Shown piece by piece: positions 8,562-45,819 of a stretch of 64,000 nt of DNA. The DNA lies in the IMG/VR virus record IMGVR_UViG_3300033182_000674, positions 1-64,000 of that record; one strand, written 5' to 3'. Within the stretch, counting starts at the first letter, position 1, and the number at the start of each line of letters is the position of its first letter. The notes beneath the pieces were generated by a model. It made no database searches. It worked only from the letters and a program-made list of their open reading frames with translations, and was not told the DNA's origin. Made by a program: the position numbers and the translations under genes.

Positions 8562-8570
8562 TATTATTCC

Positions 8571-9962: not shown

Positions 9963-9967
9963 TTTAA

Positions 9968-11044: not shown

Positions 11045-11054
11045 TTATTATTCC

Positions 11055-12518: not shown

Positions 12519-12528
12519 TTCTTATTCC

Positions 12529-13965
12529 TTAGTGTTGTTGTCCTGCTGCACCATGTCTAGCAACGGTTATATCGCCGACGTCAGTCGCATTACCGTCTGC
12601 TGCAAATGGGAACTTATCAATTACATTAGAAACTCCTGGTAAAAAACCACCAGAAGCATATCCATAATCAGTAGATGATTGTCCGACAGCCCATAATCTA
12701 GCAACTGTTAGATTACCAACGTCTGTTGCATTAGCGTCAGTTGCGAATGGAAACTTGTCGATTACATTTGTTGGACCTGGAAATCCACCAGAAGCGTATC
12801 CATATTCAGAAGATGATTGACCTGCTAGAGCATTTTTAACACCAGTTAGATCACCAACATCTGTTGCGTTGCCATCAGATGTAAATGAGAACTTGTCGAT
12901 AACATTCGAATATGCAGTTCCATAACCGCCTGCAGAATATCCGTTTTCAGATGATGATTGTCCTGTTACTCTATATCTAGCAACGGTTAGATCTCCGATA
13001 TCTGTTGCGTTAGTGTCTGTTGCGAACGGGAACTTGTCGATGACGTTGGATGGACCTCCACCACCAGAAGCATACCCATAGTCAGAAGAAGATTGTCCTG
13101 CAGGTGTGTTATTCCTAGCAACGGTTAGATCACCAACATCTGTTGCATTAGCATCGGTTGCGAATGGAAACTTGTCGATAACGTCTGATATTCCTGCATC
13201 ATAACCAGCAGAAGTATATCCAGATTCAGATGATGATTGTCCTGCTGCAGAATATCTAGCACTCGTTAAATCACCAACATCTGTTGCGTTGCCATCAGAT
13301 GTAAATGAGAATTTATCAATTACATTTACAACAGCAGGATCTTGGCCACCAGTAGCATATCCATAGTTAGAACCTTGGAAAGAATACGGTAAAGCAAATG
13401 CTATTGTAAATTCAGATATGGCTGTAGCGATATTGATATCATCGGTTGCTTTAAAGGTAACATCAAATACACCACCATTAGAATCATAACCTGCTGCAAT
13501 AATATCTGCAAGGGATTTTGCAGTAATAGTGAATGTACCATTTGAATCATTAGTAATAGTCGCAAGGTCATTTGCAGAATCTGTAACAGAATATGTCCAC
13601 TTAATAGGTAAACCTTCAGGATCTGTTGCAGATAATTGAATTACTGTAGCAGTACCGCCAATTGAATCTAGTTCGTATGCAGCTTCTGGTAAACCGCCAG
13701 AATCCCACGTTGGGCTTTCATTAACAATTGCAATATTATACCAGCCTGCGCCAGTCCAAATGTATAAACGATTTGTTGCTTGAACAAATGCTTGATCACC
13801 AATTTGATTTCCTGATGCGGGTAAATCATTAGCAGTTGAATAATCTTCAGTACCTAATGGAATATCTGCTGATAATTGAGATGCATCGATTGTACCAATG
13901 GATGAACTGGTGACCGTACCATCGTTATTAATGAGTTTACCTAATAATAGACTTTTTGTTGGCAT
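12529..13965 (-). CDS. Array A paralog 1: N-module plus six-repeat kelch-like propeller
   Basis: Six highly regular VIDKF(P/S)F..D.NATD(V/I)G(D/N)(L/I)T repeats; ends GQQH. Confidence 0.88.
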   Translation of the reverse strand: MPTKSLLLGKLINNDGTVTSSSIGTIDASQLSADIPLGTEDYSTANDLPASGNQIGDQAFVQATNRLYIWTGAGWYNIAIVNESPTWDSGGLPEAAYELDSIGGTATVIQLSATDPEGLPIKWTYSVTDSANDLATITNDSNGTFTITAKSLADIIAAGYDSNGGVFDVTFKATDDINIATAISEFTIAFALPYSFQGSNYGYATGGQDPAVVNVIDKFSFTSDGNATDVGDLTSARYSAAGQSSSESGYTSAGYDAGISDVIDKFPFATDANATDVGDLTVARNNTPAGQSSSDYGYASGGGGPSNVIDKFPFATDTNATDIGDLTVARYRVTGQSSSENGYSAGGYGTAYSNVIDKFSFTSDGNATDVGDLTGVKNALAGQSSSEYGYASGGFPGPTNVIDKFPFATDANATDVGNLTVARLWAVGQSSTDYGYASGGFLPGVSNVIDKFPFAADGNATDVGDITVARHGAAGQQH

Positions 13966-13999: not shown

Positions 14000-14007
14000 T
14001 ATTTATA
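14000..14007 (-). promoter_or_regulatory. Late promoter upstream of array A
   Basis: TATAAATA ~35 nt upstream of the 13965 start codon. Confidence 0.8.
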
Positions 14008-31561: not shown

Positions 31562-31578
31562 ATTAACACCTCCATGTT

Positions 31579-31586
31579 TATTTATA
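31579..31586 (-). promoter_or_regulatory. Late promoter carried by the endonuclease cassette
   Basis: TATAAATA between the tRNA 5' remnant and the endonuclease RBS. Confidence 0.75.
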
Positions 31587-31605
31587 TGCTTATTTATCAT
31601 TTCCA

Positions 31606-32585: not shown

Positions 32586-32660
32586 TGGCGGGCATACCAG
32601 GATTCGAACCTGGAACGAGGGTTTAGAAGACCCTTGTGATATCCCTTTCACCATATGCCC
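32586..32660 (-). tRNA. tRNA-Arg(TCT)
   Basis: GGGCATA/TATGCCC acceptor, AGGGT-CTTCTAA-ACCCT, CCAGG-TTCGAAT-CCTGG, GCCA. Confidence 0.95.
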
Positions 32661-33386: not shown

Positions 33387-33935
33387 TTATTCCTTATGTG
33401 TATACCAAATATTATCTGGTCCAATGTTATATCCTAAAATACTTATACCTGACAAATGAGTACTACCAAACTCTTCATCTATTGCCTTTTTAACTTCTGG
33501 CATATCAATATCATGTCCAGATACTAAACCACCTTTTTTAACTTTTGGATACCATGCATGAATATCCTTTTTAACTCCAGCATAACTATGATCAGCGTCA
33601 ATAAATACAAAGTCTAATGAATTATCTTCGATATCATTTGCTGCTAATGCTGTAAAATTTCTAACTATTTTTGCTCTAGGTTTATAATTGTCAGCAAACT
33701 CTAATAAATCTTTATACCAAGGTGCTGGCTCTTTTTCTAATAGTTTTTCTGTAGTAGTGATTCCTTCTGCTTTCCAAATTCTATCATTAAAGAATACATC
33801 TACGCCATATAGTGTTAAATTAGGACAATTTTCAATAAGATGTTTAAATGTTGGTCCACGTAATACACCAAGTTCAGCACCTATTTTATAATCATTATCT
33901 TTTATAATTTTCTCAAGCCATAATTTTCTATTCAC
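33387..33935 (-). CDS. Class I SAM methyltransferase (Methyltransf_24-like)
   Basis: GAELGVLRG, LYGVD, SLDFVFIDADHSY..VKKDI..W..KVKKGG.VSGHD. Confidence 0.88.
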   Translation of the reverse strand: MNRKLWLEKIIKDNDYKIGAELGVLRGPTFKHLIENCPNLTLYGVDVFFNDRIWKAEGITTTEKLLEKEPAPWYKDLLEFADNYKPRAKIVRNFTALAANDIEDNSLDFVFIDADHSYAGVKKDIHAWYPKVKKGGLVSGHDIDMPEVKKAIDEEFGSTHLSGISILGYNIGPDNIWYTHKE

Positions 33936-34594
33936 AATTTGCTCCTAATATATTCTTTACCTTTTGGTCCAGTCCAATGCACTGCTTTCTTCTTATTGCT
34001 GTCTTGACCATCTAATAATTGAATACGTAACCAATTATATTCGTTTGGTACATCATTAATATACATTAATCTTGTTAGAGGATTATTCATCATTGAGTGT
34101 AGAACCTCTTGATCTCCAACCTGTGGATTTTGTTCTACATTATAAGCCCATTGATGTAAAATCTGTGGTGAATCTTTAAAAGCCACAACTCCTGAATTAT
34201 GCCATGTCATACCACGACGTTTAGTCCAAGGCTTATCTTCCACCATTGCTAACTTATTATCTATACAATAATTAAAAACACCTGAGATATCATCCAATAC
34301 TTCGATATCAGTATCTATCCAACATGTATAATTAGCTTTTTTAGAAGCAGTAATCATTGACTTTGGTTTTTTAAACCAACCTTGTTCAGTTAAATGTGAT
34401 AGATCAATTACTTCTGATACTTTAGATTTTTCTAATTTATTTAATGCTTCTTTTGACATACCAAAGTTAGCAACAATCATTGGTGTATCATTATGTTTAA
34501 AATAACCATCTAAAAACCATTCTAGCATCCATTCAGTATTTGTATCGCATCCTGTTAAGAATACTTTATCATACGATGTCATAACCAGTTCCAC
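33932..34594 (-). CDS. GT-A glycosyltransferase (GT8/GT77-like)
   Basis: WFKKP, CWIDTD (DxD), HNSGVV, GDQEVL, YNWLR, HWTG.KGK. Confidence 0.75.
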   Translation of the reverse strand: MELVMTSYDKVFLTGCDTNTEWMLEWFLDGYFKHNDTPMIVANFGMSKEALNKLEKSKVSEVIDLSHLTEQGWFKKPKSMITASKKANYTCWIDTDIEVLDDISGVFNYCIDNKLAMVEDKPWTKRRGMTWHNSGVVAFKDSPQILHQWAYNVEQNPQVGDQEVLHSMMNNPLTRLMYINDVPNEYNWLRIQLLDGQDSNKKKAVHWTGPKGKEYIRSKL

Positions 34595-35219
34595 CTTTCC
34601 AATTGTGTTTTGCTAAACAACCTTCTTCTTTTTGAATTGTAGTAAATGTATCTCTAGCTTCTACTGCCCAAGGATAATATTCTTCAAGCCAAGGGAAATT
34701 ACTTGTATTTAGAAATACATCTGTTGGTCTAGCATCAGTCTTTGCTTTTTCAATAATAGCTTTTGCGCCTAATCTATTTAGCATATAAGCATGAGCACCA
34801 GGTAAATATGGTTTAGACGTTAAAGGATTAACACCAAACATATTAGGTGTATTATATTTACCATATGATGGGTGACCAAATGAAATAAGTTTATTATAAA
34901 CTACAATTTTTGGAATAGGTCCAACAAAATATGCATCATGCTCTAGTATAAGATAATCATCATTATCTTTTGCTGCCATTTCCCATAATGAATAATGAGA
35001 TAAAAATGCTGCAACACAATTTTCTAAACGAGAATACTTCTCATTGAATCCATCTACGGGAATTCCTTTTTCTTCTAATAGCTTTAATGGATTATCTGAT
35101 GGTGTAATAGCTTTAAATATTTGAACATCAATATCATAAGTCTTAGCTGTATCAATACATCTATTTGCAGCCTTCATAGATAATTCATTATCTTCTATAG
35201 CAATAACAAAAGCTTTCAT
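34569..35219 (-). CDS. Glycosyltransferase family 25
   Basis: FKAITP, AAFLSHYSLWE, LILEHDA, GAHAYML. Confidence 0.85.
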   Translation of the reverse strand: MKAFVIAIEDNELSMKAANRCIDTAKTYDIDVQIFKAITPSDNPLKLLEEKGIPVDGFNEKYSRLENCVAAFLSHYSLWEMAAKDNDDYLILEHDAYFVGPIPKIVVYNKLISFGHPSYGKYNTPNMFGVNPLTSKPYLPGAHAYMLNRLGAKAIIEKAKTDARPTDVFLNTSNFPWLEEYYPWAVEARDTFTTIQKEEGCLAKHNWKGGTGYDIV

Positions 35220-35228
35220 TTCAAAACC

Positions 35229-35924
35229 TCATTCGGTCGTGGTCGATTTTAATTTTTGTGTATCAGTGTAATATGTTTTAGTTACACCTAATTCACCTGG
35301 CATTAATTGTTTACACATTATAGCATCATTAGGCCATAACCCAAATTGATTAACCAACTCTATTAGATGCTTAGCTGCACTAGGTTTAATTATATATGCA
35401 GAGTTTCCAGCCAAACCTTGTGGTACGTTATCAGAATCTATTGATGGTACTGGTTGAAAATCATTATCTTTACTTTGAATTTTACTATCAAACAAATGAG
35501 CTTTACGAGTATTACCAATAGGATTGTTGATACCTATTATACCATATTTTGTATCAGTCGTGTTAAAATTTATTTTCTTTTTAAAAATTGCATCATGTTC
35601 TAATATAAGAATTGGCTCATCATCTTCAACACATTTCTTCCATAGATTATAATGACTCATAGCACAAGCAATTCTACTATCTGGATTCTTTGTAGGATAT
35701 GCTTTCTTTAGTAAGCCAGAAGCCATATCAAGCCCACCACCAGTCCAAGGATAATTCCATTTAACACCATTAATGGCCATATCTTTATTTACATTAATAG
35801 GTGTGATTGCATCAAATCTTTCAATTTGAAAATCATTACTAACTTTTTCAGAGCTTTCTACTAATTTAGAATAAGCAGACTCAGATAATTCGTTATCTTT
35901 TATTACTATACAATATGCTTTCAT
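35229..35924 (-). CDS. Glycosyltransferase family 25
   Basis: RFDAITP, IACAMSHYNLWKK, ILILEHDA, GNSAYIIKP.AAK.L, PND. Confidence 0.88.
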   Translation of the reverse strand: MKAYCIVIKDNELSESAYSKLVESSEKVSNDFQIERFDAITPINVNKDMAINGVKWNYPWTGGGLDMASGLLKKAYPTKNPDSRIACAMSHYNLWKKCVEDDEPILILEHDAIFKKKINFNTTDTKYGIIGINNPIGNTRKAHLFDSKIQSKDNDFQPVPSIDSDNVPQGLAGNSAYIIKPSAAKHLIELVNQFGLWPNDAIMCKQLMPGELGVTKTYYTDTQKLKSTTTE

Positions 35925-36598
35925 ATTTTCTTAGATGAAGAATTTAATTCTTTTTCCTTTATATATTTTACTGGAGATGGATGAATATAATACAAAGAGA
36001 ATAATTCATCGTCAAACAATAAATCGTTTTGTGTCCAGCCGTTTGTTTTACACCAATCAACAATAATTTTACACGCTTCTGGTGTTAGAATATACCCAGT
36101 ACCGCCTGCAAAATATTTTTTACCGTGAGGATGTACATAAAACACTTTATGTAATCCATCACCATTTATATTTAATTGTGTTGTATTCTTTAAATTATTA
36201 TAATGCTTTAAGGCAATAAGCATACTATCAGTTGTTAATTGTATACCTAATGGAGTATTCATATTAAAATTATTTGGAATATTTAAATCACCACAACAAA
36301 CTGTATCATGTTCAACAATAGCAATAGGTTCATTTAATTCTATACATTTTACCCATAATTCATAATGTGAATAGAAACAAGCTTTCTTTGTTAATGCTAA
36401 TTTTTGATTACTATATTTTTTAGTTAATTCACCAGTCTTAATATTATACTTTTTATCGTAATCATTTAATATTGAAGGATAACATCCATCATGTAATTGT
36501 GGTTCCCATCCTTTATATTTTAAAAAGGTATCATAAGATTCTTTGGCAATCTTTTCAGATTGATCATATATTGAATTATATACTATAAATGTTTTCAT
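35921..36598 (-). CDS. Glycosyltransferase family 25
   Basis: ACFYSHYELW.KC...IAIVEHD, GTGYILTPEAC..I. Confidence 0.82.
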   Translation of the reverse strand: MKTFIVYNSIYDQSEKIAKESYDTFLKYKGWEPQLHDGCYPSILNDYDKKYNIKTGELTKKYSNQKLALTKKACFYSHYELWVKCIELNEPIAIVEHDTVCCGDLNIPNNFNMNTPLGIQLTTDSMLIALKHYNNLKNTTQLNINGDGLHKVFYVHPHGKKYFAGGTGYILTPEACKIIVDWCKTNGWTQNDLLFDDELFSLYYIHPSPVKYIKEKELNSSSKKI

Positions 36599-36600
36599 AA

Positions 36601-37263
36601 TTAAAAATCGTAATTAAATGCTTCAATATCTCTTTTATACAAATTAGCAATTAAATCTTTACTCTCGGTTGAAAATAATTCTTTATAAGCTTTATTATTA
36701 TTTTTAGACGGATTAGTCCTTTTGTCAAAAGACTTGTCTTTAAAAAATGGTATTTGTTGCATATCATCTTTTAAATTTTCAATTTTACAAATTTTGTCGA
36801 ATATTGATACATCTTTTATCCATGTCATTTGATCATGTGCTAAGCTAAACCAAGTATTATTCCAAGGGAGGTTAACATTAATGTGTAACCATTCATTAAA
36901 ATCTTTTTCCATTAAATTAAGTTCATTTAATAAAATAGTATCTGGTACTCTTTTAAACTTTCTAATTCGACTAGTTGTTTTTTTATATAATGAATTTGCT
37001 AATATTTCTTTTCTAAAAAAATACCAACTGCATACTCTATCCCAAGGATTTCTAACAACAGTAAACTTATAATATGAATTAAAATCAGGAATTTGTTTTT
37101 GACACATATCAATTGTAGAATGATAATTACCATCTGTTGTTTTATTATTAGTTACTTCATAGATATCTTTATTAATTCTGCCCATTGCAACTCTAACTGA
37201 TTTACCAGCAGTTTTAGGAATATGAACAAAGAGTAATTTTTCTTTTGGTGAATATACACTCAT
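36601..37263 (-). CDS. Sulfotransferase family 2
   Basis: FVHIPKTAGKS (5'-PAPS loop), FTVVRNPWDRVCSWY, YKRDIEAFNYDF. Confidence 0.9.
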   Translation of the reverse strand: MSVYSPKEKLLFVHIPKTAGKSVRVAMGRINKDIYEVTNNKTTDGNYHSTIDMCQKQIPDFNSYYKFTVVRNPWDRVCSWYFFRKEILANSLYKKTTSRIRKFKRVPDTILLNELNLMEKDFNEWLHINVNLPWNNTWFSLAHDQMTWIKDVSIFDKICKIENLKDDMQQIPFFKDKSFDKRTNPSKNNNKAYKELFSTESKDLIANLYKRDIEAFNYDF

Positions 37264-37904
37264 TAAGTAATATCCTTAGTAAAAATAATATTATATTGAT
37301 TAGTATATTCTTCATCTCTAAAAGATGAAGTAAAACCTTGAGAATGTAAAAAGTCTATAATCTTATTATCTATAACCTGATCTTTCCAGAATTGTTTGCT
37401 TTCTACTTCTATCTTTATCAAAGATGTTTTTTCTAAAATTGATTTAGCACCAACTAATACTTCGTAGCCAACACCTTCAACGTCTATCCACATTGCAATA
37501 TTATTATATTCATTAGAAAACATATGATCGATTTTATCTACAGAAACTGTAACATGTTCATAATGAACATTACTTTCTGTTCTTTCAAGTATAGAATTAT
37601 TCTTTTTGGTTTTAGGCATGATTCTGCCATTATTAGTCAATTGAACATAAAATGTAGTTTTACCAACATAATCTGATATTGCTAAATTATTAAATTCAAT
37701 ATTAGAAGGAAGTGTATCTTTAAACATATCATAATTATAAGGATTAGCTTCGTATGCAATTACTCTACATTCAGGAACTAATTTTTTTACTTTACAACTT
37801 GTTTGTGCATTAAATGAACCAATTTCTAAAAATAAGTCAGGTTTAGTATCAGAAATTAAAGAATAAAATTTCTGATCTAACTCATTTACATCTAATGTTT
37901 TCAT
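37263..37904 (-). CDS. FkbM-family methyltransferase
   Basis: FLEIGSFNA, IAYEANP, NLAISD, MWIDVEG.GYEVL.GA. Confidence 0.88.
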   Translation of the reverse strand: MKTLDVNELDQKFYSLISDTKPDLFLEIGSFNAQTSCKVKKLVPECRVIAYEANPYNYDMFKDTLPSNIEFNNLAISDYVGKTTFYVQLTNNGRIMPKTKKNNSILERTESNVHYEHVTVSVDKIDHMFSNEYNNIAMWIDVEGVGYEVLVGAKSILEKTSLIKIEVESKQFWKDQVIDNKIIDFLHSQGFTSSFRDEEYTNQYNIIFTKDIT

Positions 37905-38686
37905 AATATAACCTTTTTTAATTGTTCTATGTTATTACCACGATCTAGTAGTTTATCTCTTAAGAAGAAATGAACAAAGTATGCTTCCTTAATCTTATCA
38001 TCAATAACACCTTTATACAAAGCATTCCATTTCCAATCCATGTTTTTTACTTTCATCTTTTCTCTCTTAACCCATGTATTTAAAAGAGTCTGATCTGTAG
38101 ACCATTTCCACGCACCGATGCCATCAACAAAATCTTTAAATTCTGGACGGCGAATAAATTGTTCTGGCGTATCACCTCTTAGGTAAGTATCTATACTTTT
38201 ATTAAAGACCATTAATCCCATATTAAAGAATTCAGCACCAAGACTATTCCACTTCCAATCAACATCTTTTAATGAATCATATTGCATTCTAGAATAATTA
38301 ATAATCTTTCTTTTATAGTCTTCAGTTAATGGCATTTCACGTTCTACAACTCCGCCAAAATCGTAACTCGAATCCAAATCATCAAAAATATTAGGTGCTG
38401 TATCACGTATATAGATGTCAGCGTCCACAATAGAAATTTGATCGTATTGCCCCAAATAACCAAAAGCATTTTCTTTTTCATAGATTGGCAAAAAGCCTCC
38501 ATGTTTTTCATAAGACTCTTTACTACGATTAGTAGCAAATACATCAGGCTTAATTGCAAGAATAGGATGTCGTTGTACAATATGATCTATATCGTATTTC
38601 TTACAATACGCTGCAACTGATTCTACACAAAAATCATATAGTTTATTTCGTTGGCCAACATAGACCTGATAGATTAATCGTTTCAC
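37901..38686 (-). CDS. GT-A glycosyltransferase (GT8-like)
   Basis: IVDADIYI (DxD), FFNMGLMV, TDQTLLN, KWNAL, FVHFF. Confidence 0.8.
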   Translation of the reverse strand: MKRLIYQVYVGQRNKLYDFCVESVAAYCKKYDIDHIVQRHPILAIKPDVFATNRSKESYEKHGGFLPIYEKENAFGYLGQYDQISIVDADIYIRDTAPNIFDDLDSSYDFGGVVEREMPLTEDYKRKIINYSRMQYDSLKDVDWKWNSLGAEFFNMGLMVFNKSIDTYLRGDTPEQFIRRPEFKDFVDGIGAWKWSTDQTLLNTWVKREKMKVKNMDWKWNALYKGVIDDKIKEAYFVHFFLRDKLLDRGNNIEQLKKVIL

Positions 38687-39522
38687 TTCAATACCTCTGG
38701 ATAAAATGCTTCATAGAACCATTTATTACTATTAATAATATGATTATGAAATCCATCACTTAATTTTCTATTTGGTTCTTTCCACGGTAATAATTGTGGT
38801 TTAGTTACATGTTCTGTTTTTTCTGCGAAGTAAGCATTATCATGTTCAAACATTTCTGATTGAGTAATATTATTTAGATCATGTTTATATGGTTTAAGCT
38901 CTAAGAATTCATATACCTTTTCTATGATATATATTGGATCTTTAAGGAAGTCTTCGTAACGAAGAAACTGAATTCTTTCTGGTTGTTCATTCCACAGGTA
39001 CATAAGCTTTCTAACTTCTTTATTTAAGCCTTCATGTAAACTTGTTTCTTTAAAATCTAAATAATAAGATAGCTTTTCATTTTCTGTCATAGAATTATAA
39101 GGCGTATCATTTTGACCAAGAGTATCATATGCAGCAAAAGAAGAATTTAATTTATCAAAGCTTTCTATTACATCTCGTAGATCACGAATAGTAACAAGTA
39201 TCTTTGACTTTGGAAAGAGGTGATGTAAATCACTCCAGTTTCTGGCTTTTGATATAACACTTGGTTTATTAGTTAAACCTGAATACCAGCCTTGAGCACC
39301 ATAAGTAATTAATCCATGATAAGCCGCATCAGCTTGTCTAACAGACATTGCTTGGACTTGTTCATTATAGCGTGAACGAGTTAATATCTTCTTATGAAGA
39401 ATAAAAGGAAGCGGATCAGTTGTAGTGGTAAATACTTCTGGATTCTGTTGAAGTATATTCATCAATACTGTAGATCCAGAACGTGGTAAACCACTACATA
39501 AATGTAAATTTTTCATATTCAT
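38683..39522 (-). CDS. Sulfotransferase (P-loop type)
   Basis: SGLPRSGSTVL..IL.QNP, KILVTIRDLRDVIES, LRYEDFL.DP. Confidence 0.9.
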   Translation of the reverse strand: MNMKNLHLCSGLPRSGSTVLMNILQQNPEVFTTTTDPLPFILHKKILTRSRYNEQVQAMSVRQADAAYHGLITYGAQGWYSGLTNKPSVISKARNWSDLHHLFPKSKILVTIRDLRDVIESFDKLNSSFAAYDTLGQNDTPYNSMTENEKLSYYLDFKETSLHEGLNKEVRKLMYLWNEQPERIQFLRYEDFLKDPIYIIEKVYEFLELKPYKHDLNNITQSEMFEHDNAYFAEKTEHVTKPQLLPWKEPNRKLSDGFHNHIINSNKWFYEAFYPEVLK

Positions 39523-39565: not shown

Positions 39566-40984
39566 TTAGTATTGTTGTCCTGCTGACCTATATCTACCAG
39601 AGGTTATATCACCTACATCTGTTGCATTAGCATCTGATGCGAATGGGAACTTATCTATAACATTAACATAGCCATCAGTTGCATTAAAGCCACCAGATGA
39701 ATAACCATCTGATGTAGATGATTGACCTGTTACACCCCATCTAGAATGAGTCAGATCACCAACATCGGTTGCATTGCCATCGGTTGCAAATGAAAACTTG
39801 TCGATGATCGTCTGAACCGAACCGGCGTCGCCACCAGAAGTATAACCATGCTCAGAAGAAGATTGACCTGCTGCACCATATCTAGTAACGGTTATATCAC
39901 CGACATCTGTTGCATTAGCATCAGTTGCGAATGGGAATTTGTCTATAACATTGCCACCATAATTTAGTCCACCTGAAGTATAACCATGCTCAGAAGAAGA
40001 TTGTCCTGCTGAATAACCTCTAGCAATGGTTAGATCGCCGACATCAGTCGCATTTCCATTTGTTGCAAACGGGAATTTGTCAATTACATTTATATTATAA
40101 GCACCAGAATTGTATCCATACTCAGTTGATGATTGGCCTGATAAATAATATCTACCAACGGTTAGATTACCGACATCTGTTGCATTAGCATCAACTGCGA
40201 ATGGGAATTTGTCTATAACATTTCCAACTGCTGGTACGGGTGAACCACCAGAAGTATATCCATTTTCTGCAGAAGATTGACCTGCTGGATAACTTCGGTT
40301 TGTAGTACTTAAATTAGCAACAAATATTGAGTTCGCATCAGATGCAAATGGGAACTTTTCAATGAGAGTTTCACCACCGGCACCACCACTATTGTATCCA
40401 TAATTAGAACCTTGAGCTTGAGTGCCACCTGCAGCAAATGATATAGTAAATTCAGACAACGCAGTAGCAAGGTTATTACCATCAGATGCTCTGAAAGTAA
40501 CATCAAAAGTACCGCCTTCTGAATCATAACCAGCACTTAATATATCTGCAAGGGACTTAGCAGTAATCGTAAACGTACCATTAGAATCGTTCGTAATAGT
40601 CGCAAGATCATTACCCGAATCTGTTACTAAGTAAGACCATTGAATTGGAAATCCATCTGGATCTGTCGCGGCCAATGTAATAGTAGTTGCAATTCCACCA
40701 ATAGAGTCTAGATCATAAGCAGCTTCTGGTAAACCACCAGAATCCCAAGTAGGAGTAGCATTAATTAAAGCAATACTATACCAACCAGATCCATTCCAGA
40801 TGTATAGTTTATTATTTGATGCTACAAATGCTTGATCACCAATTTGATTGCCGGTTGCTGGTAAATTATCAATAGTAGCATAATCTTCAGTGCCTAAAGG
40901 AACATCTGCTGAAATAGCAGTTTCACCAATTTTACCATCTTGGCCGATGATTTTTGTTAGATAAAAAGATTTAGTAATTGCCAT
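39566..40984 (-). CDS. Array B paralog 4: N-module plus six-repeat propeller
   Basis: Same N-module and IDKFPFA.DANATDVGD repeats as 12529-13965; ends GQQY. Confidence 0.88.
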   Translation of the reverse strand: MAITKSFYLTKIIGQDGKIGETAISADVPLGTEDYATIDNLPATGNQIGDQAFVASNNKLYIWNGSGWYSIALINATPTWDSGGLPEAAYDLDSIGGIATTITLAATDPDGFPIQWSYLVTDSGNDLATITNDSNGTFTITAKSLADILSAGYDSEGGTFDVTFRASDGNNLATALSEFTISFAAGGTQAQGSNYGYNSGGAGGETLIEKFPFASDANSIFVANLSTTNRSYPAGQSSAENGYTSGGSPVPAVGNVIDKFPFAVDANATDVGNLTVGRYYLSGQSSTEYGYNSGAYNINVIDKFPFATNGNATDVGDLTIARGYSAGQSSSEHGYTSGGLNYGGNVIDKFPFATDANATDVGDITVTRYGAAGQSSSEHGYTSGGDAGSVQTIIDKFSFATDGNATDVGDLTHSRWGVTGQSSTSDGYSSGGFNATDGYVNVIDKFPFASDANATDVGDITSGRYRSAGQQY

Positions 40985-40996
40985 TTCTTTTATTCC

Positions 40997-42451
40997 TTAA
41001 ATTTGATAACCACCGGTATGTTCTGGTCCGCCAGTCATTGATAAAACTGATTGTGAAGTAATTTCATTTGCATAAGCAAATTTTATTTTCTGACTGCTGC
41101 TGCCGGTGCTTACATATGCACTTGTTAATTCACATGAAGAAGCGCCATATTGATTACTTTGTGATAAATCTCCAACATTTGAAGTATTCCCTTCATTGGC
41201 AAATGGCATTTTTCTTAATGTTGCGTAGTAAGTACCAAATATTAAATCTCGGCCGCCATATGCATAACCATCAGTTGCACTAGCAGCACCCACAGGACCA
41301 TTACGAGCTCCATCTATGTTACCTATATTACCTAAAGAACCATTACTTGCAAAACTATATTTTTGTATATTACTCAATGCCGCTTGAGATGGGGGAAAAT
41401 ACTGGCCGCCAGCAACATAACCATTCTCTACACCGTTCATTGGTGCTTGATCTACTGATTTTTGTGTTAAACTACCACTGTTTATTGGTGTTTCGGATGC
41501 AAAAGGATATCGTTTAACTGCAGCTTGAACTGGTGGATTCCATGAATATGGGTTATAACCGCCCATTCTATAACCATCTGTTTCGGAAGACATTCCAGCT
41601 CCACCATATAGATTGTAAGCAAAACTACTTTCTATTGAGGTTGTTGGAAAAGTAACAGTTGAGCCACCTGCTGCAAATGGAAATTTTGCAACGTTATTAT
41701 TATTTCCATTTGGTACTCCTGGATAAGTATAACCACTAAATACATATCCAGCTTCTTTTGATGACATACCTACATGATAGCCTCGTACACTTGGCGCTCC
41801 ATTAATTGGGTGATATGCTTCAGTTGTAATAGTTTCAGAAGCATATGGAAATCTTAGTATTTGATTAGCAGTTGTATAATAACCAGTAGTTGATCCTTGA
41901 AATACATATGGAATATATAAACTAATTGTAAATTCAGACAAAGCTGAGGCAATATTAATTCCATCTGTTGCTCTAAAAGTAACATTAAACGTTCCACCTG
42001 TTGAATCATATGATTCAATTTGAGATGTTGGTAATGCTGTAATAGTAAATACACTTGAATCTTGTTGAATAGTTGCCAAATATTGAGCAGAATCAGATGC
42101 TGAATAATCCCACGTAATAGGTAATCCTTCAGGATCAGATGCTGATAATTGTATAATAGTTGAACCAACATTATACGAATCTAATTCGTATTCTGCTGCA
42201 GGTTGACCACCAGAATCCCATGTGGGACTCTGATTGATTAAAGCGATATTATACCAACCGGCTCCAGTCCAAATGTATAAACGATTTGTCGCTTGTACAA
42301 ATGCTTGATCACCTACTTGATTACCAGTTGCAGGTAAGTCATTTGCTGTAGTATAATCTTCAGTACCTAATGGAACATCGGCACTCAACTTTTCAGTATT
42401 AATTGTAGTTGAGGTATTTAATAGTTTTGATAAATTAACTGAATTAGACAT
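40997..42451 (-). CDS. Array B paralog 3: N-module plus divergent propeller
   Basis: N-module intact; repeats diverged (RFPYASE, KFPFAAG, RYPFASE, KYSFASN, KMPFANE). Confidence 0.8.
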   Translation of the reverse strand: MSNSVNLSKLLNTSTTINTEKLSADVPLGTEDYTTANDLPATGNQVGDQAFVQATNRLYIWTGAGWYNIALINQSPTWDSGGQPAAEYELDSYNVGSTIIQLSASDPEGLPITWDYSASDSAQYLATIQQDSSVFTITALPTSQIESYDSTGGTFNVTFRATDGINIASALSEFTISLYIPYVFQGSTTGYYTTANQILRFPYASETITTEAYHPINGAPSVRGYHVGMSSKEAGYVFSGYTYPGVPNGNNNNVAKFPFAAGGSTVTFPTTSIESSFAYNLYGGAGMSSETDGYRMGGYNPYSWNPPVQAAVKRYPFASETPINSGSLTQKSVDQAPMNGVENGYVAGGQYFPPSQAALSNIQKYSFASNGSLGNIGNIDGARNGPVGAASATDGYAYGGRDLIFGTYYATLRKMPFANEGNTSNVGDLSQSNQYGASSCELTSAYVSTGSSSQKIKFAYANEITSQSVLSMTGGPEHTGGYQI

Positions 42452-42461
42452 TTTTTATTTC

Positions 42462-43556
42462 CTATACCGTTATGATACTGCCTTCTGTTATGTTTGACCA
42501 TGTAGGATTACCATTTGTTTGATTTGATCTCAATGTCGCAAAGGTTACCCAATTTGCTGCATCATAAGTACCGTTTAAATTTCCAGTGTAATATTGTAAT
42601 AATGTTTCTTGTGGGCATCTATTAGGTCGTGCACCAATAAATGTTCTCAAATTTAATGAACCACCTTCCATTGCAGTGTATTCAATTGGATCATGTAAAT
42701 ACCATGCGATCCAATGTCCTGTTCCAGATGACCAAGATGTTCTTGCACCATTAAACATATTACCAGGACCAGCATCCCAACCACCATTATACGTTGTTTG
42801 TGTAAATGGATCACTGGCGTTTGAAGTATATATGCCATATTTTCCAGGAACTGGTATTTGCCCATATGTTGCGGACATAGCAGTTCCAGATGTTCCTGAC
42901 GTTGATAATCTAGTACCATCGCCTAAATAAATTCCTCCAGCATTATCAATATCCCAGAGATAATAACTTGGACCAACACTAGCATATAATCTCCACAATT
43001 GGAAAGTATTTGGCGCCCAACCTAATGTAAAGTTTGAACTTGCTGTTGCTGTATTTACTCCATCAGATGCTTTAAATGTAATATCAAATGAACCACCACT
43101 TGAATCATATCCAGCATCTAAAATATTTTGTAATGACTTTGGTGCAATTATAAACGTTCCATTTGAATCATTTGTAACTGTAACAAAATCATCACCTGAA
43201 TCCATTTCGTAAGTCCAATTTAAGACTTGCTCTTCTGGATCAGTTGCGATCAAATTAATTGTTGTTGAAGCAACAGAATCTAATACATACGCTGCTTCAG
43301 GTAATCCTGCAGAATCCCATATTGGAGATTCATTTACTAATGATATATTGTACCAACCTTGTCCATTCCAAAGATATAATCTATTTGTAGAAGCAACATA
43401 GGCTGTATCACCAGTATCATTACCACTTAATGGTAAATCATTTGGCGTTGCATAATCTTCAGTACCTAATGGTACTTCATCGGAAATAGCAGTTTGAACA
43501 ATCTTACCATTATCTCCAATTATTAAACCAAGATTAAAAGACTTTGAAACGGCCAT
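42462..43556 (-). CDS. Array B paralog 2: N-module plus unrelated C-terminal domain (possibly discoidin-like)
   Basis: N-module, then NMFNG..SW..WIAWY..PNRCP..LQY..NWV pattern. Confidence 0.72.
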   Translation of the reverse strand: MAVSKSFNLGLIIGDNGKIVQTAISDEVPLGTEDYATPNDLPLSGNDTGDTAYVASTNRLYLWNGQGWYNISLVNESPIWDSAGLPEAAYVLDSVASTTINLIATDPEEQVLNWTYEMDSGDDFVTVTNDSNGTFIIAPKSLQNILDAGYDSSGGSFDITFKASDGVNTATASSNFTLGWAPNTFQLWRLYASVGPSYYLWDIDNAGGIYLGDGTRLSTSGTSGTAMSATYGQIPVPGKYGIYTSNASDPFTQTTYNGGWDAGPGNMFNGARTSWSSGTGHWIAWYLHDPIEYTAMEGGSLNLRTFIGARPNRCPQETLLQYYTGNLNGTYDAANWVTFATLRSNQTNGNPTWSNITEGSIITV

Positions 43557-43559
43557 ATA

Positions 43560-44714
43560 TTAATCCATTGTTAATGTATCAATATAATCATTAGCATCCA
43601 TCATACGAACAGATGGTGTAGTGCCAGATCTTCTATTACAGCTAGCACCAATGTATGTTACACCACTAACTGTACCATCACCAATTTTAACCCAGTTATT
43701 ACTAGTATGACTAGATTGTCTATACCACCAACGTGATACGCCATTTGCAACTCTTACAGCAAACCACCAATCAGTACAAGTAGAACCTTGATATGCATTA
43801 TATGTAGTGTCAATACCAGTAAAACCAAAGCCATTCGAATCAGTATCATTACTTAATCGACTAACACCTTCAACAACTTGATTACTTGCGTTGTATAAGT
43901 ACATACCACCACCACCTCTATTACTGAAGCTGGTCGCATAACCAGAGAAATAATATACTGCTAAGTATTCATCACCTAATTCCATTGTCCTTGGTTGAAC
44001 ATGCATACCATCAAACATTTTGGTTGTACTTGTAAGAGTCCATGTCCCAGTGTTAGCATCGTATGAATCAGTCCATGTACCACCATCACTATACGCATCT
44101 AATAAAACACGAGTTGAATTAGCCCAAGCATCTCCTTGAGTATCTAAGTTAACTGCAACACCATTGGAAAAGGTAATTGTAAATTCTGATACAGCACCAA
44201 TGATATTAATACCATCAGTCGCTCTAAATGTTACAGCAGCAGTACCACCTGCAGAATCATATCCAGCTGCTAGAATATCTTCAAGTGTTTTCGCAGTAAT
44301 TGTAAACTCATCATTGTTTTGAGAAATTGTAAATAGATCTGCAGCAGAATCAGCTGCTTCATATGTCCATTGTATAGGTAAACCTTCTGGATCAGATGCA
44401 GCCAATTGAATTACAATAGGTGTTCCACTATTTGAATCCAGTTCATATGCAGCTTGAGGTTGGCCATTGGAGTCCCATATTGGACTTTCATTAATTAAAG
44501 CAATATTATACCAGCCAGCTCCAGTCCAGACATAAAGACGATTTGTTTCAGCGACATAAGCTTGATCACCAACTTGATTACCAGTAGATGGTAATTGCGT
44601 GGCTGTACTATAGTCTTCGGTTCCTAGTGGAATATCTTCAGACAAAGCTTGTGTTGATATCTTGTTATCTTGTCCAAGAATTAAGCCTAAATTAAAAGAC
44701 TTAGATACAGCCAT
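43560..44714 (-). CDS. Array B paralog 1: N-module plus unrelated beta-sandwich-like C-terminus
   Basis: N-module, then Trp/Tyr-rich strands (WWFAVRV..VSRWWYR..WVKIG). Confidence 0.72.
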   Translation of the reverse strand: MAVSKSFNLGLILGQDNKISTQALSEDIPLGTEDYSTATQLPSTGNQVGDQAYVAETNRLYVWTGAGWYNIALINESPIWDSNGQPQAAYELDSNSGTPIVIQLAASDPEGLPIQWTYEAADSAADLFTISQNNDEFTITAKTLEDILAAGYDSAGGTAAVTFRATDGINIIGAVSEFTITFSNGVAVNLDTQGDAWANSTRVLLDAYSDGGTWTDSYDANTGTWTLTSTTKMFDGMHVQPRTMELGDEYLAVYYFSGYATSFSNRGGGGMYLYNASNQVVEGVSRLSNDTDSNGFGFTGIDTTYNAYQGSTCTDWWFAVRVANGVSRWWYRQSSHTSNNWVKIGDGTVSGVTYIGASCNRRSGTTPSVRMMDANDYIDTLTMD

Positions 44715-44726: not shown

Positions 44727-45668
44727 TTAGTTATCAGTTGTTTCTTCGGTTGGTTCTTTATAACCAATCATCTTATCATAACTAATACCTTCTGTGATAC
44801 CATTCTTGAATCCCATCGTATTCATACGAATTTCATCAACTTTCACCACATCAATCAATTCATTGACTACTGTATCTACGAATTCATGTAGACCACTAGT
44901 GTCCCAGCTACCAGTAGATAACTCTTGCTGAATATAAGCTTTAATTGTTACCAACATTTTAGTTGGATTAACGCCTATTTGCTCAAGGTATTCCTGTTCG
45001 CCTTTGGTAATAGAACCATATTGTCTTACGTCACGAATACATTGAACAACACTTCTTTTCAGATGAGCTTTTGACTCTTGTTTCTCAATGTCTTCTTCAT
45101 TAAATTCGCCCATATTTTCTTGTAATTGTTCATACAAGTCAGTAAGAGCTAGAATGTCTTTCATAGCACCTTCAATATATGTTGTGCCACTTGCCATTCC
45201 TTCTTTTAATTCGAGAAGTTTTACTTTAAGATCAACTTCTCTCCAGTATTCGATTTCAGGATTAGAAAGTTCTTCTTCTATCTTTTTAATCTTAACTTCG
45301 TTTTTAACTTGTCGCCACTTAGCTTCATTCAAAGCTGATTTCTTACTAGAAATCTCAGCAGCAATTTGTCTCATATTCTTTTCAGGACTATGGTAAGATA
45401 AATTAATATGTTTCCACATCCATTGTGTATGGCTTCTATTCCAAATGTTTTGAAGATCTTGAGTCTTCGCTAACGCTTGGTCAACCATAACACTATTCTC
45501 TACAAGACTTCTACCACCAAATGATTCAGTCTTTGCGAGTGTACCATGTCCAAATACTTTTGATACAGGTACATTATATTCAGATCCGTCGGTTACAATT
45601 AAATCTTGTCTAATCTCTTCAAATAGAGTTAATTCAGTATTTAATTCTTTAGTGTCTGTTTCAGCCAT
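44727..45668 (-). CDS. Coiled-coil-rich protein heading array B (313 aa)
   Basis: WNRSHTQWMWK..NMRQIAAEI..KK.AL.E motif; co-transcribed with the array. Confidence 0.65.
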   Translation of the reverse strand: MAETDTKELNTELTLFEEIRQDLIVTDGSEYNVPVSKVFGHGTLAKTESFGGRSLVENSVMVDQALAKTQDLQNIWNRSHTQWMWKHINLSYHSPEKNMRQIAAEISSKKSALNEAKWRQVKNEVKIKKIEEELSNPEIEYWREVDLKVKLLELKEGMASGTTYIEGAMKDILALTDLYEQLQENMGEFNEEDIEKQESKAHLKRSVVQCIRDVRQYGSITKGEQEYLEQIGVNPTKMLVTIKAYIQQELSTGSWDTSGLHEFVDTVVNELIDVVKVDEIRMNTMGFKNGITEGISYDKMIGYKEPTEETTDN

Positions 45669-45811
45669 TATATTTTATCCTCAACTAATTCCTTAAGAAG
45701 ATCATAAGCATCTTTTTCTTGCATGCTTAAAGTTCTTAGGATTTCACTTAGTTCAATTGTTGTTAAATCTAATATAGATTCTGCTAGTTGCATTTCCATA
45801 GTTCTTTCCTA

Positions 45812-45819
45812 TATTTATA
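45812..45819 (-). promoter_or_regulatory. Late promoter upstream of array B
   Basis: TATAAATA just before the AGGAAAG RBS of a 43-aa ORF that precedes the 313-aa gene. Confidence 0.75.

What the first reader, a model, noticed from the sequence alone, without database searches (positions are those of the whole stretch)
39566..44714. Array B: four more paralogs, two with unrelated lectin-like heads
The same N-module is fused to one canonical propeller, one strongly diverged propeller and two different non-repeat beta-rich domains. Across both arrays, nine genes give at least four distinct head types on a common adaptor. This implies a multi-valent attachment site on the particle that accepts interchangeable tips (inference).
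Basis: partly seen in the sequence, partly recalled or inferred. Interest (0 to 1): 0.65.

Follow-up and report, generated by a model that had tools for sequence, protein, structure and literature searches.

The report
Swappable-head phage fibre gene array
Four neighbouring genes of an uncultured 220-kb T4-like marine phage encode predicted trimeric fibre proteins with one shared N-terminal anchor-and-spacer module and different sugar-binding-type heads; they belong to an 18-gene family in this genome that most likely serves as a set of exchangeable host-recognition tips.

Summary
Four tightly packed minus-strand genes (39566-44714) share a ~188-aa N-module and carry four different C-terminal heads. 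B1 has six Kelch-like repeats. B2 has a strongly diverged version of the same repeat. B4 has a ConA/L-type-lectin-like jelly roll in my model. B3 has an unrelated beta-sandwich, probably galactose-binding/F5-8-C-like, which remains only a lead.

The N-module consists of an N-terminal peptide, a small beta domain and a cadherin-like Ig domain. It is predicted to homotrimerise through residues 7-75 (ipSAE 0.77, best control 0.00).

T4-type late-promoter motifs precede arrays A, B and C. In related viral contigs, family members sit directly upstream of the neck genes gp13/gp14, in the published "host recognition cluster". A near-identical strain shows cassette replacement exactly at module boundaries.

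Best reading: modular, virion-borne, glycan-binding fibres. The docking site is unknown, so the "multivalent attachment site" is untested. The 313-aa neighbour is linked to the propeller family, not to the N-module.

This is a new variant of a known kind, namely multi-RBP phages with a conserved anchor and variable tips.

The parts
45812..45819 (-). TATAAATA, T4-type late-promoter motif heading the array B operon
   Evidence: Genome-wide, 28 of 44 such sites lie within 60 nt upstream of an ORF start on the same strand, including gp13-like and baseplate genes.
45668..45799 (-). 43-aa ORF. It starts 12 nt after the promoter motif, and its stop overlaps the ATG of the 313-aa gene.
   Evidence: Read from the sequence. 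An ORF of 43 aa is called at the same place in the sister contig L082.
44727..45668 (-). 313-aa conserved, mostly helical protein of unknown function; first large gene of the operon
   Evidence: No Pfam or PDB match. Not fibritin-like. 90 relatives on IMG/VR stretches. 46 of 80 loci hold Kelch-like propeller genes within 8 kb. 99% identical in L082.
43560..44714 (-). B4, 384 aa: N-module (nt 44151-44714) plus ConA/L-type-lectin-like head (nt 43560-44150)
   Evidence: AF2 model, pLDDT 83.8. VIA Z 10-11.3 over residues 183-384 to the thrombospondin C-terminal lectin domain, PRYSPRY domains, legume lectin, ERGIC-53, CBM66 and phage J-1 Dit CBM2. The Atlas gives ConA-like matches at TM 0.63-0.69. 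Only 8 head relatives among 1.84 billion representatives; four of the five I checked carry the N-module.
42462..43556 (-). B3, 364 aa: N-module (nt 42993-43556) plus a ~177-aa beta-sandwich head (nt 42462-42992), possibly galactose-binding/F5-8-C-like
   Evidence: AF2 model, pLDDT 82.0, head all-beta. Atlas feature hits to F5/8 type C at 0.93-0.95 and TM 0.51-0.57. BFVD hits to phage F5/8-C proteins. No PDB or Pfam match. Eight sequence relatives, some on other N-termini.
40997..42451 (-). B2, 484 aa: N-module (nt 41897-42451) plus a strongly diverged six-unit Kelch-like head (nt 40997-41896)
   Evidence: Repeat HMM scores 62.7 bits against a shuffled maximum of 7.2, with units at residues 200-473. 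BLASTP to the other propeller heads, 1e-9 to 1e-20.
39566..40984 (-). B1, 472 aa: N-module (nt 40415-40984) plus a canonical six-unit Kelch-like propeller head (nt 39566-40414)
   Evidence: Six 44-49-aa units with a split terminal blade. The head profile hits only solved Kelch domains, with KLHL12 at E 1.5e-5. phrog_19111 at 1e-17.
7158..13965 (-). Array A: five further paralogs (four propeller heads, one non-repeat head at 9968-11044)
14000..14007 (-). TATAAATA motif 35 nt upstream of the first gene of array A
33387..39522 (-). Adjacent downstream glycan-modification genes: two sulfotransferases, an FkbM methyltransferase, three GT25 glycosyltransferases and a Methyltransf_24. They are same-strand neighbours, and whether they belong to the system is not shown.
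   Evidence: The same neighbours occur in L082. A sulfotransferase and a 2OG oxygenase recur beside propeller arrays in other viral contigs.

Best explanation
B1-B4 are late-expressed virion fibre or adhesin proteins of a T4-like myovirus. They are built on one plan.

- The first ~75 residues (an N-terminal peptide plus a four-stranded beta domain) intertwine into a homotrimer and anchor the protein to the particle. The trimer is predicted; the anchoring is inferred.
- A cadherin-like Ig domain (residues ~75-183) acts as a spacer. The fold comes from the models; the role is inferred.
- A C-terminal globular head binds a surface glycan of the host. The folds are Kelch-type six-bladed propellers in B1 and B2, a ConA/L-lectin-like jelly roll in B4, and another beta-sandwich in B3. 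Sugar binding is inferred from fold class only.

The 18 paralogs give the phage a repertoire of tips on a common stem. Recombination at the conserved module borders exchanges heads between paralogs and strains, and this tunes or hedges host recognition. The exchange is seen by comparison with a sister strain; its effect on host range is inferred.
For: Genome type. T4-like myovirus: gp23-like capsid protein, gp18, gp17, gp15 and gp13/14 homologues.

N-module.
- The same fold plan appears in two independent models.
- The cadherin-like domain scores Z 9.2-9.6 at rmsd 2.0-2.7 A, and also matches phage SU10 tail and GP4 fibre domains.
- Homotrimer prediction: ipSAE 0.77 against a best control of 0.00, runs agree in >=87% of contacts, partner pLDDT >=83, interface at residues 7-75. 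The tool's calibration counts are 20 of 30 solved pairs and 1 of 23 single chains reaching the mark. They hold only roughly here, because I used my own alignment and three copies.
- The weak tblastn matches of residues 29-83 in cultured phages that are annotated with a function all fall in tail fibre proteins (PHROG tail-fibre hits in a paralog).

Expression. TATAAATA motifs lie directly upstream of arrays A, B and C. They are strongly tied to ORF starts genome-wide, 28 of 44 within 60 nt.

Genomic position. In 26 related IMG/VR loci the carriers lie with the neck-gene module, in most immediately upstream of the gp13/gp14-like genes. This is the wac/gp12 slot of T4 and the 'host recognition cluster' described for pelagi- and cyanomyophages (PMC7029224).

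Heads.
- Kelch profile match.
- ConA-like fold, Z 10-11.3.
- Other carriers hold three Laminin_G_3 domains, F5/8-C and Gly_rich_2.
- Metagenomic relatives carry FG-GAP_2, Kelch, BNR and Laminin_G_3 heads.

Evolution, from comparison with sister contig L082.
- Flanking genes are 98-99% identical in protein. The B1 N-module is 95.7% identical but its head only 59.4%. B2 is 45.7% identical overall.
- Nucleotide identity drops sharply at the module borders.
- Head dN/dS is 0.22-0.24, against 0.05-0.11 in N-modules and flanks.

Distribution. The N-module is virus-restricted: 141 IMG/VR stretches against one short MAG contig in 185,579 species genomes.
Against: - No protein of this family has been shown in a virion. 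The genome is an uncultured IMG/VR record, and the N-module is absent from cultured phages.
- No docking partner was found.
- There is no detectable homology to T4 wac, gp12 or gp10.
- In this genome the arrays lie far from the neck and baseplate modules.
- The trimer is a prediction with a self-made alignment, outside the tool's calibration.
- Sugar binding is inferred from fold class. SPRY/B30.2 domains, which bind proteins, score as high as lectins for B4.
- The B3 head fold is unresolved, and the B1 and B2 heads were not folded.
Confidence: 0.62

Rival explanations
1. The proteins are Hoc-like decoration adhesins. They are virion-borne but sit on a many-copy site (capsid or sheath). They mediate loose adherence to particles, mucus or cell surfaces rather than forming the infection-triggering receptor-binding fibres.
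For: - The Ig-like spacer plus lectin-like tip resembles surface adhesins such as SraP. SraP's cadherin-like module scores Z 9.3 and its L-lectin module Z 9.0 against B4.
- Eighteen paralogs sharing one anchor are easier to accommodate on a many-copy site.
- In this genome the arrays lie outside the baseplate module.
Against: - The predicted trimeric N-terminus and the tail-fibre-type motif matches fit fibres better than monomeric Hoc-type decoration.
- Relatives lie in the neck/baseplate-proximal host recognition cluster.
- Strain-level head replacement is typical of host-range determinants.
Confidence: 0.2
2. The proteins are collar or whisker fibres, a functional analogue of fibritin. They attach to the gp13/gp14 neck, with environment-sensing or accessory adsorption roles.
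For: - In most of the 26 related loci the carrier gene is the immediate upstream neighbour of the gp13/gp14-like genes. This is the position of wac in T4.
- Fibritins also have a conserved N-terminal anchor and swapped C-terminal domains (PMC3797505).
Against: - There is no sequence-profile similarity to T4 wac (probability 0.3%).
- There is no coiled-coil shaft.
- T4 gp12 sits in the same neighbourhood, so position does not discriminate.
- This is a sub-case of the best explanation that differs only in the attachment site.
Confidence: 0.1
3. The proteins are not in the virion. They are lectin-like proteins made in the infected cell, working together with the adjacent sulfotransferase, glycosyltransferase and 2OG-oxygenase genes. 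They might bind or mask host envelope glycans (superinfection exclusion) or act as substrates or partners of those enzymes.
For: - Array B is flanked by glycan-modifying genes and a 2OG oxygenase.
- The same enzymes recur beside propeller arrays in other viral contigs.
- PMC7029224 proposes that such glycosyltransferases alter the host surface.
Against: - There is no signal peptide or membrane segment at the N-termini (sequences).
- Late-promoter motifs precede the arrays.
- The N-terminus is predicted to be trimeric and fibre-like.
- The module is shared with 833-978-aa proteins that carry domains annotated as virion structural, baseplate or tail fibre in cyanophages.
Confidence: 0.08

Closest known systems
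Multi-RBP 'branched' phages with a conserved N-terminal anchor and variable tips (CBA120 TSP1-4, G7C gp63.1/gp66, Klebsiella PhiK64-1, phi92). From my own knowledge; PMC13579863 and PMC3184105 appeared but were not read in depth.
   Same: Several paralogous receptor-binding proteins in one genome. Each has a conserved N-terminal part thought to dock on the particle and a variable C-terminal specificity domain. Tips are exchanged by recombination.
   Different: - The heads here are small lectin-, CBM- or propeller-type domains, not beta-helix depolymerases.
- The anchor has no detectable homology to those systems (no Pfam or PHROG hit).
- There are 18 paralogs, dispersed in five sites.
- The attachment hierarchy is unknown.
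Host recognition cluster of pelagimyophages and cyanomyophages (Zaragoza-Solas et al. 2020, PMC7029224)
   Same: A hypervariable island next to neck gene gp14 that holds tail-fibre genes, carbohydrate-binding-domain proteins (ConA domains are named) and glycosyltransferases. Relatives of the N-module family sit exactly there.
   Different: The passages of that paper that I searched do not mention a shared N-module family or tandem arrays with swapped heads; I did not read the whole paper. In this genome the arrays lie away from gp14.
Staphylococcus phage phi11 Gp45 and related Gram-positive phage RBPs with a beta-propeller platform; lactococcal RBPs and 'evolved' Dit/BppA proteins with CBM heads. 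From my own knowledge, plus 5ly8.
   Same: Trimeric RBPs in which each chain carries its own globular propeller or beta-sandwich sugar-binding domain. The B4 head matches phage J-1 Dit CBM2 at Z 9.6.
   Different: - Those are siphovirus baseplate proteins of unrelated sequence.
- The phi11 propeller has five blades and is not Kelch-like.
- No homology was detected.
T4 fibritin (wac)
   Same: A trimeric fibre with a conserved N-terminal anchor and a modularly swapped C-terminal domain. The gene lies immediately upstream of gp13, where many family members lie.
   Different: There is no coiled-coil shaft and no profile similarity. The heads are lectin-like rather than foldon-type.
SraP binding region of Staphylococcus aureus (PDB 4m00, 4m01, 4m03)
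   Same: The same two building blocks as B4: a cadherin-like module (Z 9.3, rmsd 2.0 A) and an L-type lectin module (Z 9.0). It is an adhesin that binds a sugar.
   Different: It is a bacterial serine-rich repeat adhesin, the domains are in the opposite order, it has no trimeric anchor, and sequence identity is 12-15%.

Membership tests
Kelch-type six-bladed beta-propeller (B1 and B2 heads) | Six tandem units of ~44-56 aa with a GG doublet and conserved aromatic residues, and ring closure by a blade split between the two ends | tested here: met
   B1 has six units of 44-49 aa. The head starts with a half unit (..GYNSGG) and ends with a truncated unit. B2 has six diverged units: 62.7 bits against a shuffled maximum of 7.2.
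Kelch-type six-bladed beta-propeller (B1 and B2 heads) | Sequence-profile similarity to proven Kelch domains | tested here: met
   The profile of nine heads (A6) matches 13 PDB sequences, all Kelch domains: KLHL12 at 1.5e-5, KLHL17 at 1.3e-4, KLHL3 at 4.9e-4, KLHL20 at 1.3e-3.
Kelch-type six-bladed beta-propeller (B1 and B2 heads) | Match to Pfam Kelch models above the gathering score | tested here: not met
   No Pfam family for B1 or B2. hhalign against two metagenomic carriers with Pfam Kelch or FG-GAP heads gave probability <0.1%. This is a divergent subfamily of its own (phrog_19111).
Kelch-type six-bladed beta-propeller (B1 and B2 heads) | Propeller fold in three dimensions | not tested
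Concanavalin A-like lectin/glucanase fold (B4 head) | Curved two-sheet jelly roll that superposes on L-type lectins and CBMs | tested here: met
   VIA Z 9.6-11.3 with 147-181 aligned residues over model residues 180-384. Matches include 1ux6, 7exo, 1r1z, 4b1m and 5ly8. Atlas TM 0.63-0.69 to GH43_C2/DUF1349 clusters. SPRY domains score equally well, so the superfamily assignment is broad.
Concanavalin A-like lectin/glucanase fold (B4 head) | Sequence membership in a Pfam family (Laminin_G_3, Lectin_legB and others), and a sugar or metal site | tested here: not met
   No Pfam or PDB sequence match. The sugar site was not examined. Paralogs C1_833 and D1_865 do carry three significant Laminin_G_3 domains each.
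F5/8 type C / galactose-binding domain-like (B3 head) | Discoidin-type beta-sandwich with a sequence or structure match | tested here: inconclusive
   Atlas feature scores are 0.93-0.95 to F5_F8_type_C clusters, with TM 0.51-0.57. BFVD hits to phage F5/8-C proteins reach E 1.1e-5 and TMt 0.43. Against this, there is no Pfam hit, no PDB profile hit, the head never surfaced in the VIA lists, and there is no hhalign match to the F5/8-C head of paralog D4.
Cadherin-like / Ig-like domain (N-module residues ~75-183) | Seven-strand Greek-key sandwich that superposes on cadherin EC or bacterial CDHL modules | tested here: met
   Z 9.2-9.6, rmsd 2.0-2.7 A, 88-97 aligned residues to SraP CDHL, cadherin-23, N-cadherin and intimin D00. 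Pfam Cadherin_5 is below threshold in paralogs: 22.6-23.5 bits against a cut-off of 26.5.
T4 fibritin (wac), gp12 and gp10 anchors | Sequence-profile homology of the N-terminal anchor | tested here: not met
   hhalign probabilities are 0.3%, 0.2% and 0.2%.
Phage tail fibre / receptor-binding protein (generic) | Homotrimer formed through the N-terminal part | tested here: met
   This is a prediction only: ipSAE 0.77 against a best control of 0.00, contact agreement >=87%, pLDDT >=83, interface at residues 7-75. The calibration counts (20 of 30 solved pairs, 1 of 23 single chains) hold only roughly, because I used my own alignment and three copies.
Phage tail fibre / receptor-binding protein (generic) | Late expression and location in the morphogenetic or host-recognition module | tested here: met
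   TATAAATA motifs precede arrays A, B and C. Carriers lie directly upstream of gp13/gp14 homologues in most of the 26 related loci.
Phage tail fibre / receptor-binding protein (generic) | Presence in the virion and binding to a host receptor | not testable with these tools
   The genome is an uncultured IMG/VR record, and no cultured phage carries the N-module.

The most novel reading that the evidence does not exclude
A single T4-like phage displays a combinatorial lectin repertoire. Up to 17 different glycan-binding tips, possibly mixed as heterotrimers, compete for one conserved docking site, so each particle carries a different sample of specificities. This would be a bet-hedging adsorption apparatus more diverse than any described multi-RBP phage. 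A conserved accessory cassette (313-aa protein, double 2OG-Fe(II) oxygenase, sulfotransferases) would assemble or post-translationally modify the Kelch-like tips.
Probability: 0.15. Interest if true: 0.8.

Novelty: new variant of a known kind. Interest (0 to 1): 0.58.

Why it matters
Host recognition is the least understood part of the abundant marine T4-like phages. Their tail fibres mostly cannot be annotated (PMC7029224).

This family gives a recognisable, virus-restricted anchor module. It flags candidate receptor-binding genes on at least 141 viral contig stretches and shows how their specificities are exchanged. The module has no Pfam family or solved relative, and PHROGs gives only one weak partial hit (E 0.009).

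If the heads are indeed glycan binders, the arrays offer:
- a catalogue of natural lectin-like domains aimed at marine bacterial surfaces;
- a way to read host-range evolution from metagenomes;
- a natural plug-and-play scaffold for studying RBP modularity.

Tried and rejected
Sequence searches without result:
- Pfam and PHROG scans of B1-B4 gave nothing usable. The DNase_NucA_NucB hit is below threshold and was ignored.
- PDB sequence searches of B1, B3 and B4 gave nothing.
- blastn and tblastn of the region and of B4 against cultured phages gave no match.

B3 head:
- Four structure searches with the whole B3 model were swamped by the Ig domain and did not classify the head: Foldseek against PDB, VIA wide, VIA second look and the Atlas. 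The second look was wasted.
- A profile of the B3 head against the PDB gave no hits.
- hhalign of the B3 head against the F5/8-C head of paralog D4 aligned only the N-terminal parts.

Other homology tests:
- hhalign of the B1-type head against carriers with Pfam Kelch or FG-GAP heads gave nothing.
- The N-module shows no relation to T4 wac, gp12 or gp10.
- The 313-aa family shows no relation to wac, and a PDB search gave nothing.

Ideas rejected:
- Typical T4-like cyanophage: no psbA (Photo_RC) gene in a record that CheckV rates 100% complete.
- Recent duplication or concerted homogenisation of the N-modules: DNA identity between copies is only 62-84%.
- The 313-aa protein as a paralog-specific partner: it has no paralog in the genome, and arrays A and C lack one.

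Literature: searches for a prior description of the family, for the nearest cultured phage C48C1, or for Kelch-headed fibres found nothing relevant. Two 'Kelch' hits were an author's name.

Not used: the reads tools. No alternative genetic code was needed.

Full report
**What is there**

The window is the first 64 kb of a single 219,676-bp contig. It is an IMG/VR virus record that CheckV rates as complete.

PHROG scans show a T4-like myovirus. They find a gp23-type major head protein, scaffold, gp18 sheath, gp17 terminase, gp15 and gp13/14-type neck proteins. The capsid protein is closest to Phage C48C1 (69%), the OM43 phage Melnitz (63%) and the SAR11 phage HTVC008M (61%). There is no psbA, so this is not a typical T4-like cyanophage.

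The finding covers four minus-strand ORFs separated by 3-12 nt:
- B4: 43560-44714
- B3: 42462-43556
- B2: 40997-42451
- B1: 39566-40984

A TATAAATA motif at 45812-45819, a 43-aa ORF (45668-45799) and a 313-aa ORF (44727-45668) precede them. The stop of the 43-aa ORF overlaps the start of the 313-aa ORF.

**The observation**

An alignment with the five genes of array A shows a shared N-module of about 188 residues with 46 invariant columns, followed by unrelated sequence.

- B1 has six units of 44-49 aa. The head begins with a half unit and ends with a truncated one. This is the pattern expected when a terminal propeller blade is assembled from both ends.
- A unit HMM built from canonical repeats scores B1 at 429 bits and B2 at 62.7 bits in six units. 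The best of 200 shuffled B2 heads scores 7.2 bits. B3, B4 and A3 score at most 1.8 bits.
- The heads of B3, B4 and A3 are unrelated to each other by BLASTP and hhalign.

It is incomplete, however. An HMM of the N-module finds 18 carriers in the genome. The nine outside the window are:
- 212628-217968 (three genes)
- 71608-79015 (five genes)
- an internal copy in a 978-aa protein at 86924-89860

By BLASTP the heads fall into about ten classes. One carrier (78566-79015) is a headless deletion derivative. It joins N-module residues 1-133 directly to the propeller's C-terminal AGQQY.

**What the parts are**

The AlphaFold2 models of B4 (pLDDT 83.8) and B3 (pLDDT 82.0) give the same plan for the N-module:
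- a low-confidence N-terminal peptide with a short helix;
- a four-stranded beta domain (residues 32-73);
- an Ig-type sandwich (residues 75-183).

The sandwich superposes on cadherin-like modules at Z 9.2-9.6 and rmsd 2.0-2.7 A. The matches include SraP CDHL, cadherin-23, N-cadherin and intimin D00. It also matches domains of the phage SU10 tail and the phage GP4 fibre.

The B4 head (residues 183-384) is a ConA-like jelly roll, with Z 9.6-11.3. It matches the thrombospondin C-terminal lectin domain, legume-type lectins, ERGIC-53, VIP36, CBM66, the C-terminal domains of GH43 enzymes and the CBM2 of the 'evolved' Dit of phage J-1. PRYSPRY domains score as high. The ESM Atlas's own model agrees, at TM 0.63-0.69 to GH43_C2/DUF1349 clusters.

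The B3 head is all-beta in my model. I could classify it only by leads:
- Atlas feature scores of 0.93-0.95 and TM 0.51-0.57 to F5/8 type C clusters.
- BFVD matches to phage F5/8-C proteins.
- It never rose above the Ig matches in four other searches.
- It has no Pfam or PDB sequence relative.

A profile of nine B1-type heads matches only solved Kelch domains: KLHL12 at E 1.5e-5, then KLHL17, KLHL3, KLHL20 and KLHL2. No Pfam Kelch model reaches threshold.

Other carriers hold three significant Laminin_G_3 domains (the 833- and 865-aa proteins), Gly_rich_2, and a sub-threshold F5/8 type C domain. Metagenomic carriers add FG-GAP_2, Kelch, BNR_2, lactonase-type propellers and Laminin_G_3. No head matches an enzyme family.

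**Evidence for a virion fibre**

(i) Three copies of the N-module are predicted to form a trimer. The ipSAE is 0.77 against 0.00 for the best of three controls. The runs share at least 87% of contacts and pLDDT is at least 83. The interface lies at residues 7-75, with minor contacts at 108-113 and 168-169. The tool's calibration, 20 of 30 solved pairs and 1 of 23 single chains reaching the mark, holds only roughly, because I supplied my own alignment and three copies. This is a prediction, not a measurement.

(ii) The N-module finds no significant match in cultured phages. The few weak matches of residues 29-83 that are annotated with a function all fall in tail fibre proteins. A paralog hits tail-fibre PHROGs over the same motif.

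(iii) TATAAATA, the T4 late-promoter motif (established knowledge for T4-like phages), occurs 44 times in the genome. Of these, 28 lie within 60 nt upstream of an ORF start on the same strand, including the gp13-like gene and baseplate genes. It sits 35 nt upstream of array A, directly before the array B operon and 28 nt before the first gene of the 212-kb array.

(iv) The family occurs on 141 IMG/VR stretches, usually as tandem arrays of two to five. In 26 loci the carriers lie with the neck-gene module, and in most of them a carrier is the immediate upstream neighbour of the gp13/gp14 homologues. In T4 this slot holds gp12 and wac. In pelagi- and cyanomyophages it has been described as a hypervariable 'host recognition cluster' with tail fibres, ConA-domain proteins and glycosyltransferases (PMC7029224).

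(v) The module is virus-restricted. It appears on one short MAG contig among 185,579 species genomes.

**Evidence for exchangeable heads**

A contig from a sediment metagenome (L082) is syntenic and nearly identical. Flanking proteins are 98-99% identical, B4 95.8% and B3 97.0%. In contrast, B1 is 95.7% identical in the N-module and 59.4% in the head, and B2 is 45.7% identical overall.

Nucleotide identity along the operon:

| Segment | Window coordinates | Identity |
|---|---|---|
| 313-aa gene, B4, B3 and the first ~200 nt of B2 | down to ~42250 | 90-100% |
| Rest of B2 | ~42250 to 40997 | about 50% |
| B1 N-module | 40984 to ~40460 | 90-99% |
| B1 head | ~40460 to ~39600 | 54-79% |
| End of B1 and onward | from ~39600 | 90-100% |

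The breakpoints therefore fall at the conserved module borders.

Where orthology is kept, heads evolve faster: dN/dS is 0.22-0.24, against 0.05-0.11 in N-modules and flanks. The average still shows purifying selection.

The rare ConA-like head of B4 has only eight relatives in 1.84 billion representatives. Four of the five I checked carry the N-module. The B3 head also occurs behind other N-termini.

**The 313-aa neighbour**

This is a strongly conserved, widespread protein, with 90 IMG/VR stretches and 59% mean column identity. It has no Pfam, PDB or fibritin similarity and no paralog in the genome.

Within 8 kb of it, 46 of 80 loci hold B1-type propeller genes, against 4 of 75 N-module loci. 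Only one of those 163 propeller ORFs has the N-module. The rest use other adaptors of about 50-70 or about 120 residues, in arrays of up to eight.

A 2OG oxygenase and a sulfotransferase recur in the same neighbourhoods. They are present here at 45820-47151 and 38683-39522. The 313-aa protein is thus linked to the propeller family rather than to the N-module. Its role is open; assembly factor, modifier and platform are all possible. I did not test binding.

**Judgement**

The best-supported reading is a family of modular, late-expressed, trimeric virion fibres. Their lectin-, CBM- and propeller-type heads would recognise host surface glycans and are reshuffled at module borders (confidence about 0.6).

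What is shown: the module architecture, the fold classes of B4 and of the Ig spacer, the Kelch profile match, the promoter motifs, the synteny in relatives and the mosaic pattern.

What is predicted or inferred: trimerisation, virion location, sugar binding and the effect on host range.

The rival readings are adherence-only decoration, neck whiskers and non-virion lectins. They differ mainly in where and when the proteins act.

The principle is known from multi-RBP phages: a conserved anchor, variable tips and several RBPs per phage. What is new here:
- the anchor family, which has no Pfam family or solved relative, only one weak partial PHROG hit (E 0.009), and no significant match in cultured phages;
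- the Kelch-like and lectin-like tips in a T4-like phage;
- the scale of 18 paralogs.

I rate it a new variant of a known kind.

**Limits**

- Alignments for the head parts of the models were shallow, at 6-8 sequences.
- The B1 and B2 heads and the small N-terminal domain were not folded separately.
- The reads tools were not used.
- No step needed referral.

Noticed in passing
G000 outside the window: 212628-217968 (L003:12628-17968), 71608-79015 (L001:7608-15015), 86924-89860 (L002:2924-5860): There are nine further N-module carriers. They include two 833/865-aa proteins with three Laminin_G_3 domains each, a Gly_rich_2 head, a sub-threshold F5/8-C head, and an internal copy of the module at residues 627-775 of a 978-aa fibre-like protein.
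   Followed up: partly
G000 78566-79015 (L001:14566-15015): A 149-aa 'headless' paralog: N-module residues 1-133 are joined directly to the C-terminal ..AGQQY of the propeller type. This looks like an internal deletion derivative.
   Followed up: partly
window 33387-39522 and 45820-47151: Array B is flanked by a glycan-modification cluster and a two-domain 2OG-Fe(II) oxygenase. The cluster holds two sulfotransferases, an FkbM methyltransferase, three GT25 glycosyltransferases and a Methyltransf_24. The oxygenase and a sulfotransferase recur beside propeller arrays in many IMG/VR contigs, which hints at a conserved cassette.
   Followed up: partly
L099:7490-15148, L103:1756-9405, L102, L108 (IMG/VR contigs): There are tandem arrays of up to eight B1-type Kelch-like propeller genes downstream of the 313-aa homologue. 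They carry other, shorter N-terminal adaptors (about 50-70 aa, or about 120 aa and helical) instead of the N-module.
   Followed up: partly
NC_020851.1 (Synechococcus phage S-SKS1), e.g. L165:1-1226: S-SKS1 is the only cultured phage with the B1-type propeller. It has 13 matching places, all annotated hypothetical, next to a 2OG-Fe(II) oxygenase and tail-fibre or baseplate genes. It is a possible experimental model.
   Followed up: partly
whole genome; window sites e.g. 14000, 29229, 30018, 45812, 57855 (minus strand): TATAAATA behaves as a late promoter. Of 44 sites, 39 are on the minus strand and 28 lie within 60 nt upstream of an ORF start.
   Followed up: yes
window 17284-17465 and 22714-22895: A 182-nt direct repeat, 86% identical, 5.4 kb apart, in a region of small ORFs. 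Its nature is unknown.
   Followed up: no
window 19661-20619, 30874-30950, 32586-32660: There are six tRNA genes: Pro-TGG, Gly-TCC, Thr-TGT, Leu-TAA, Met-CAT and Arg-TCT. Two are interspersed with the ~220-aa genes downstream of array B.
   Followed up: no
window 30941-31600: A 219-aa ORF has weak NUMOD3 and endonuclease-type hits (E about 1e-3). It may be a homing-endonuclease-like gene at the edge of the glycan cluster.
   Followed up: no
BFVD hits A0A7S6C5B9 (Pelagibacter phage Eyrgjafa) and A0A4Y1NU64 (HTVC025P): The best viral structure matches of the whole B3 model are uncharacterised or Gly-rich proteins of pelagiphage podoviruses. Similar Ig-plus-head fibre architectures may therefore exist outside the myoviruses.
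   Followed up: no
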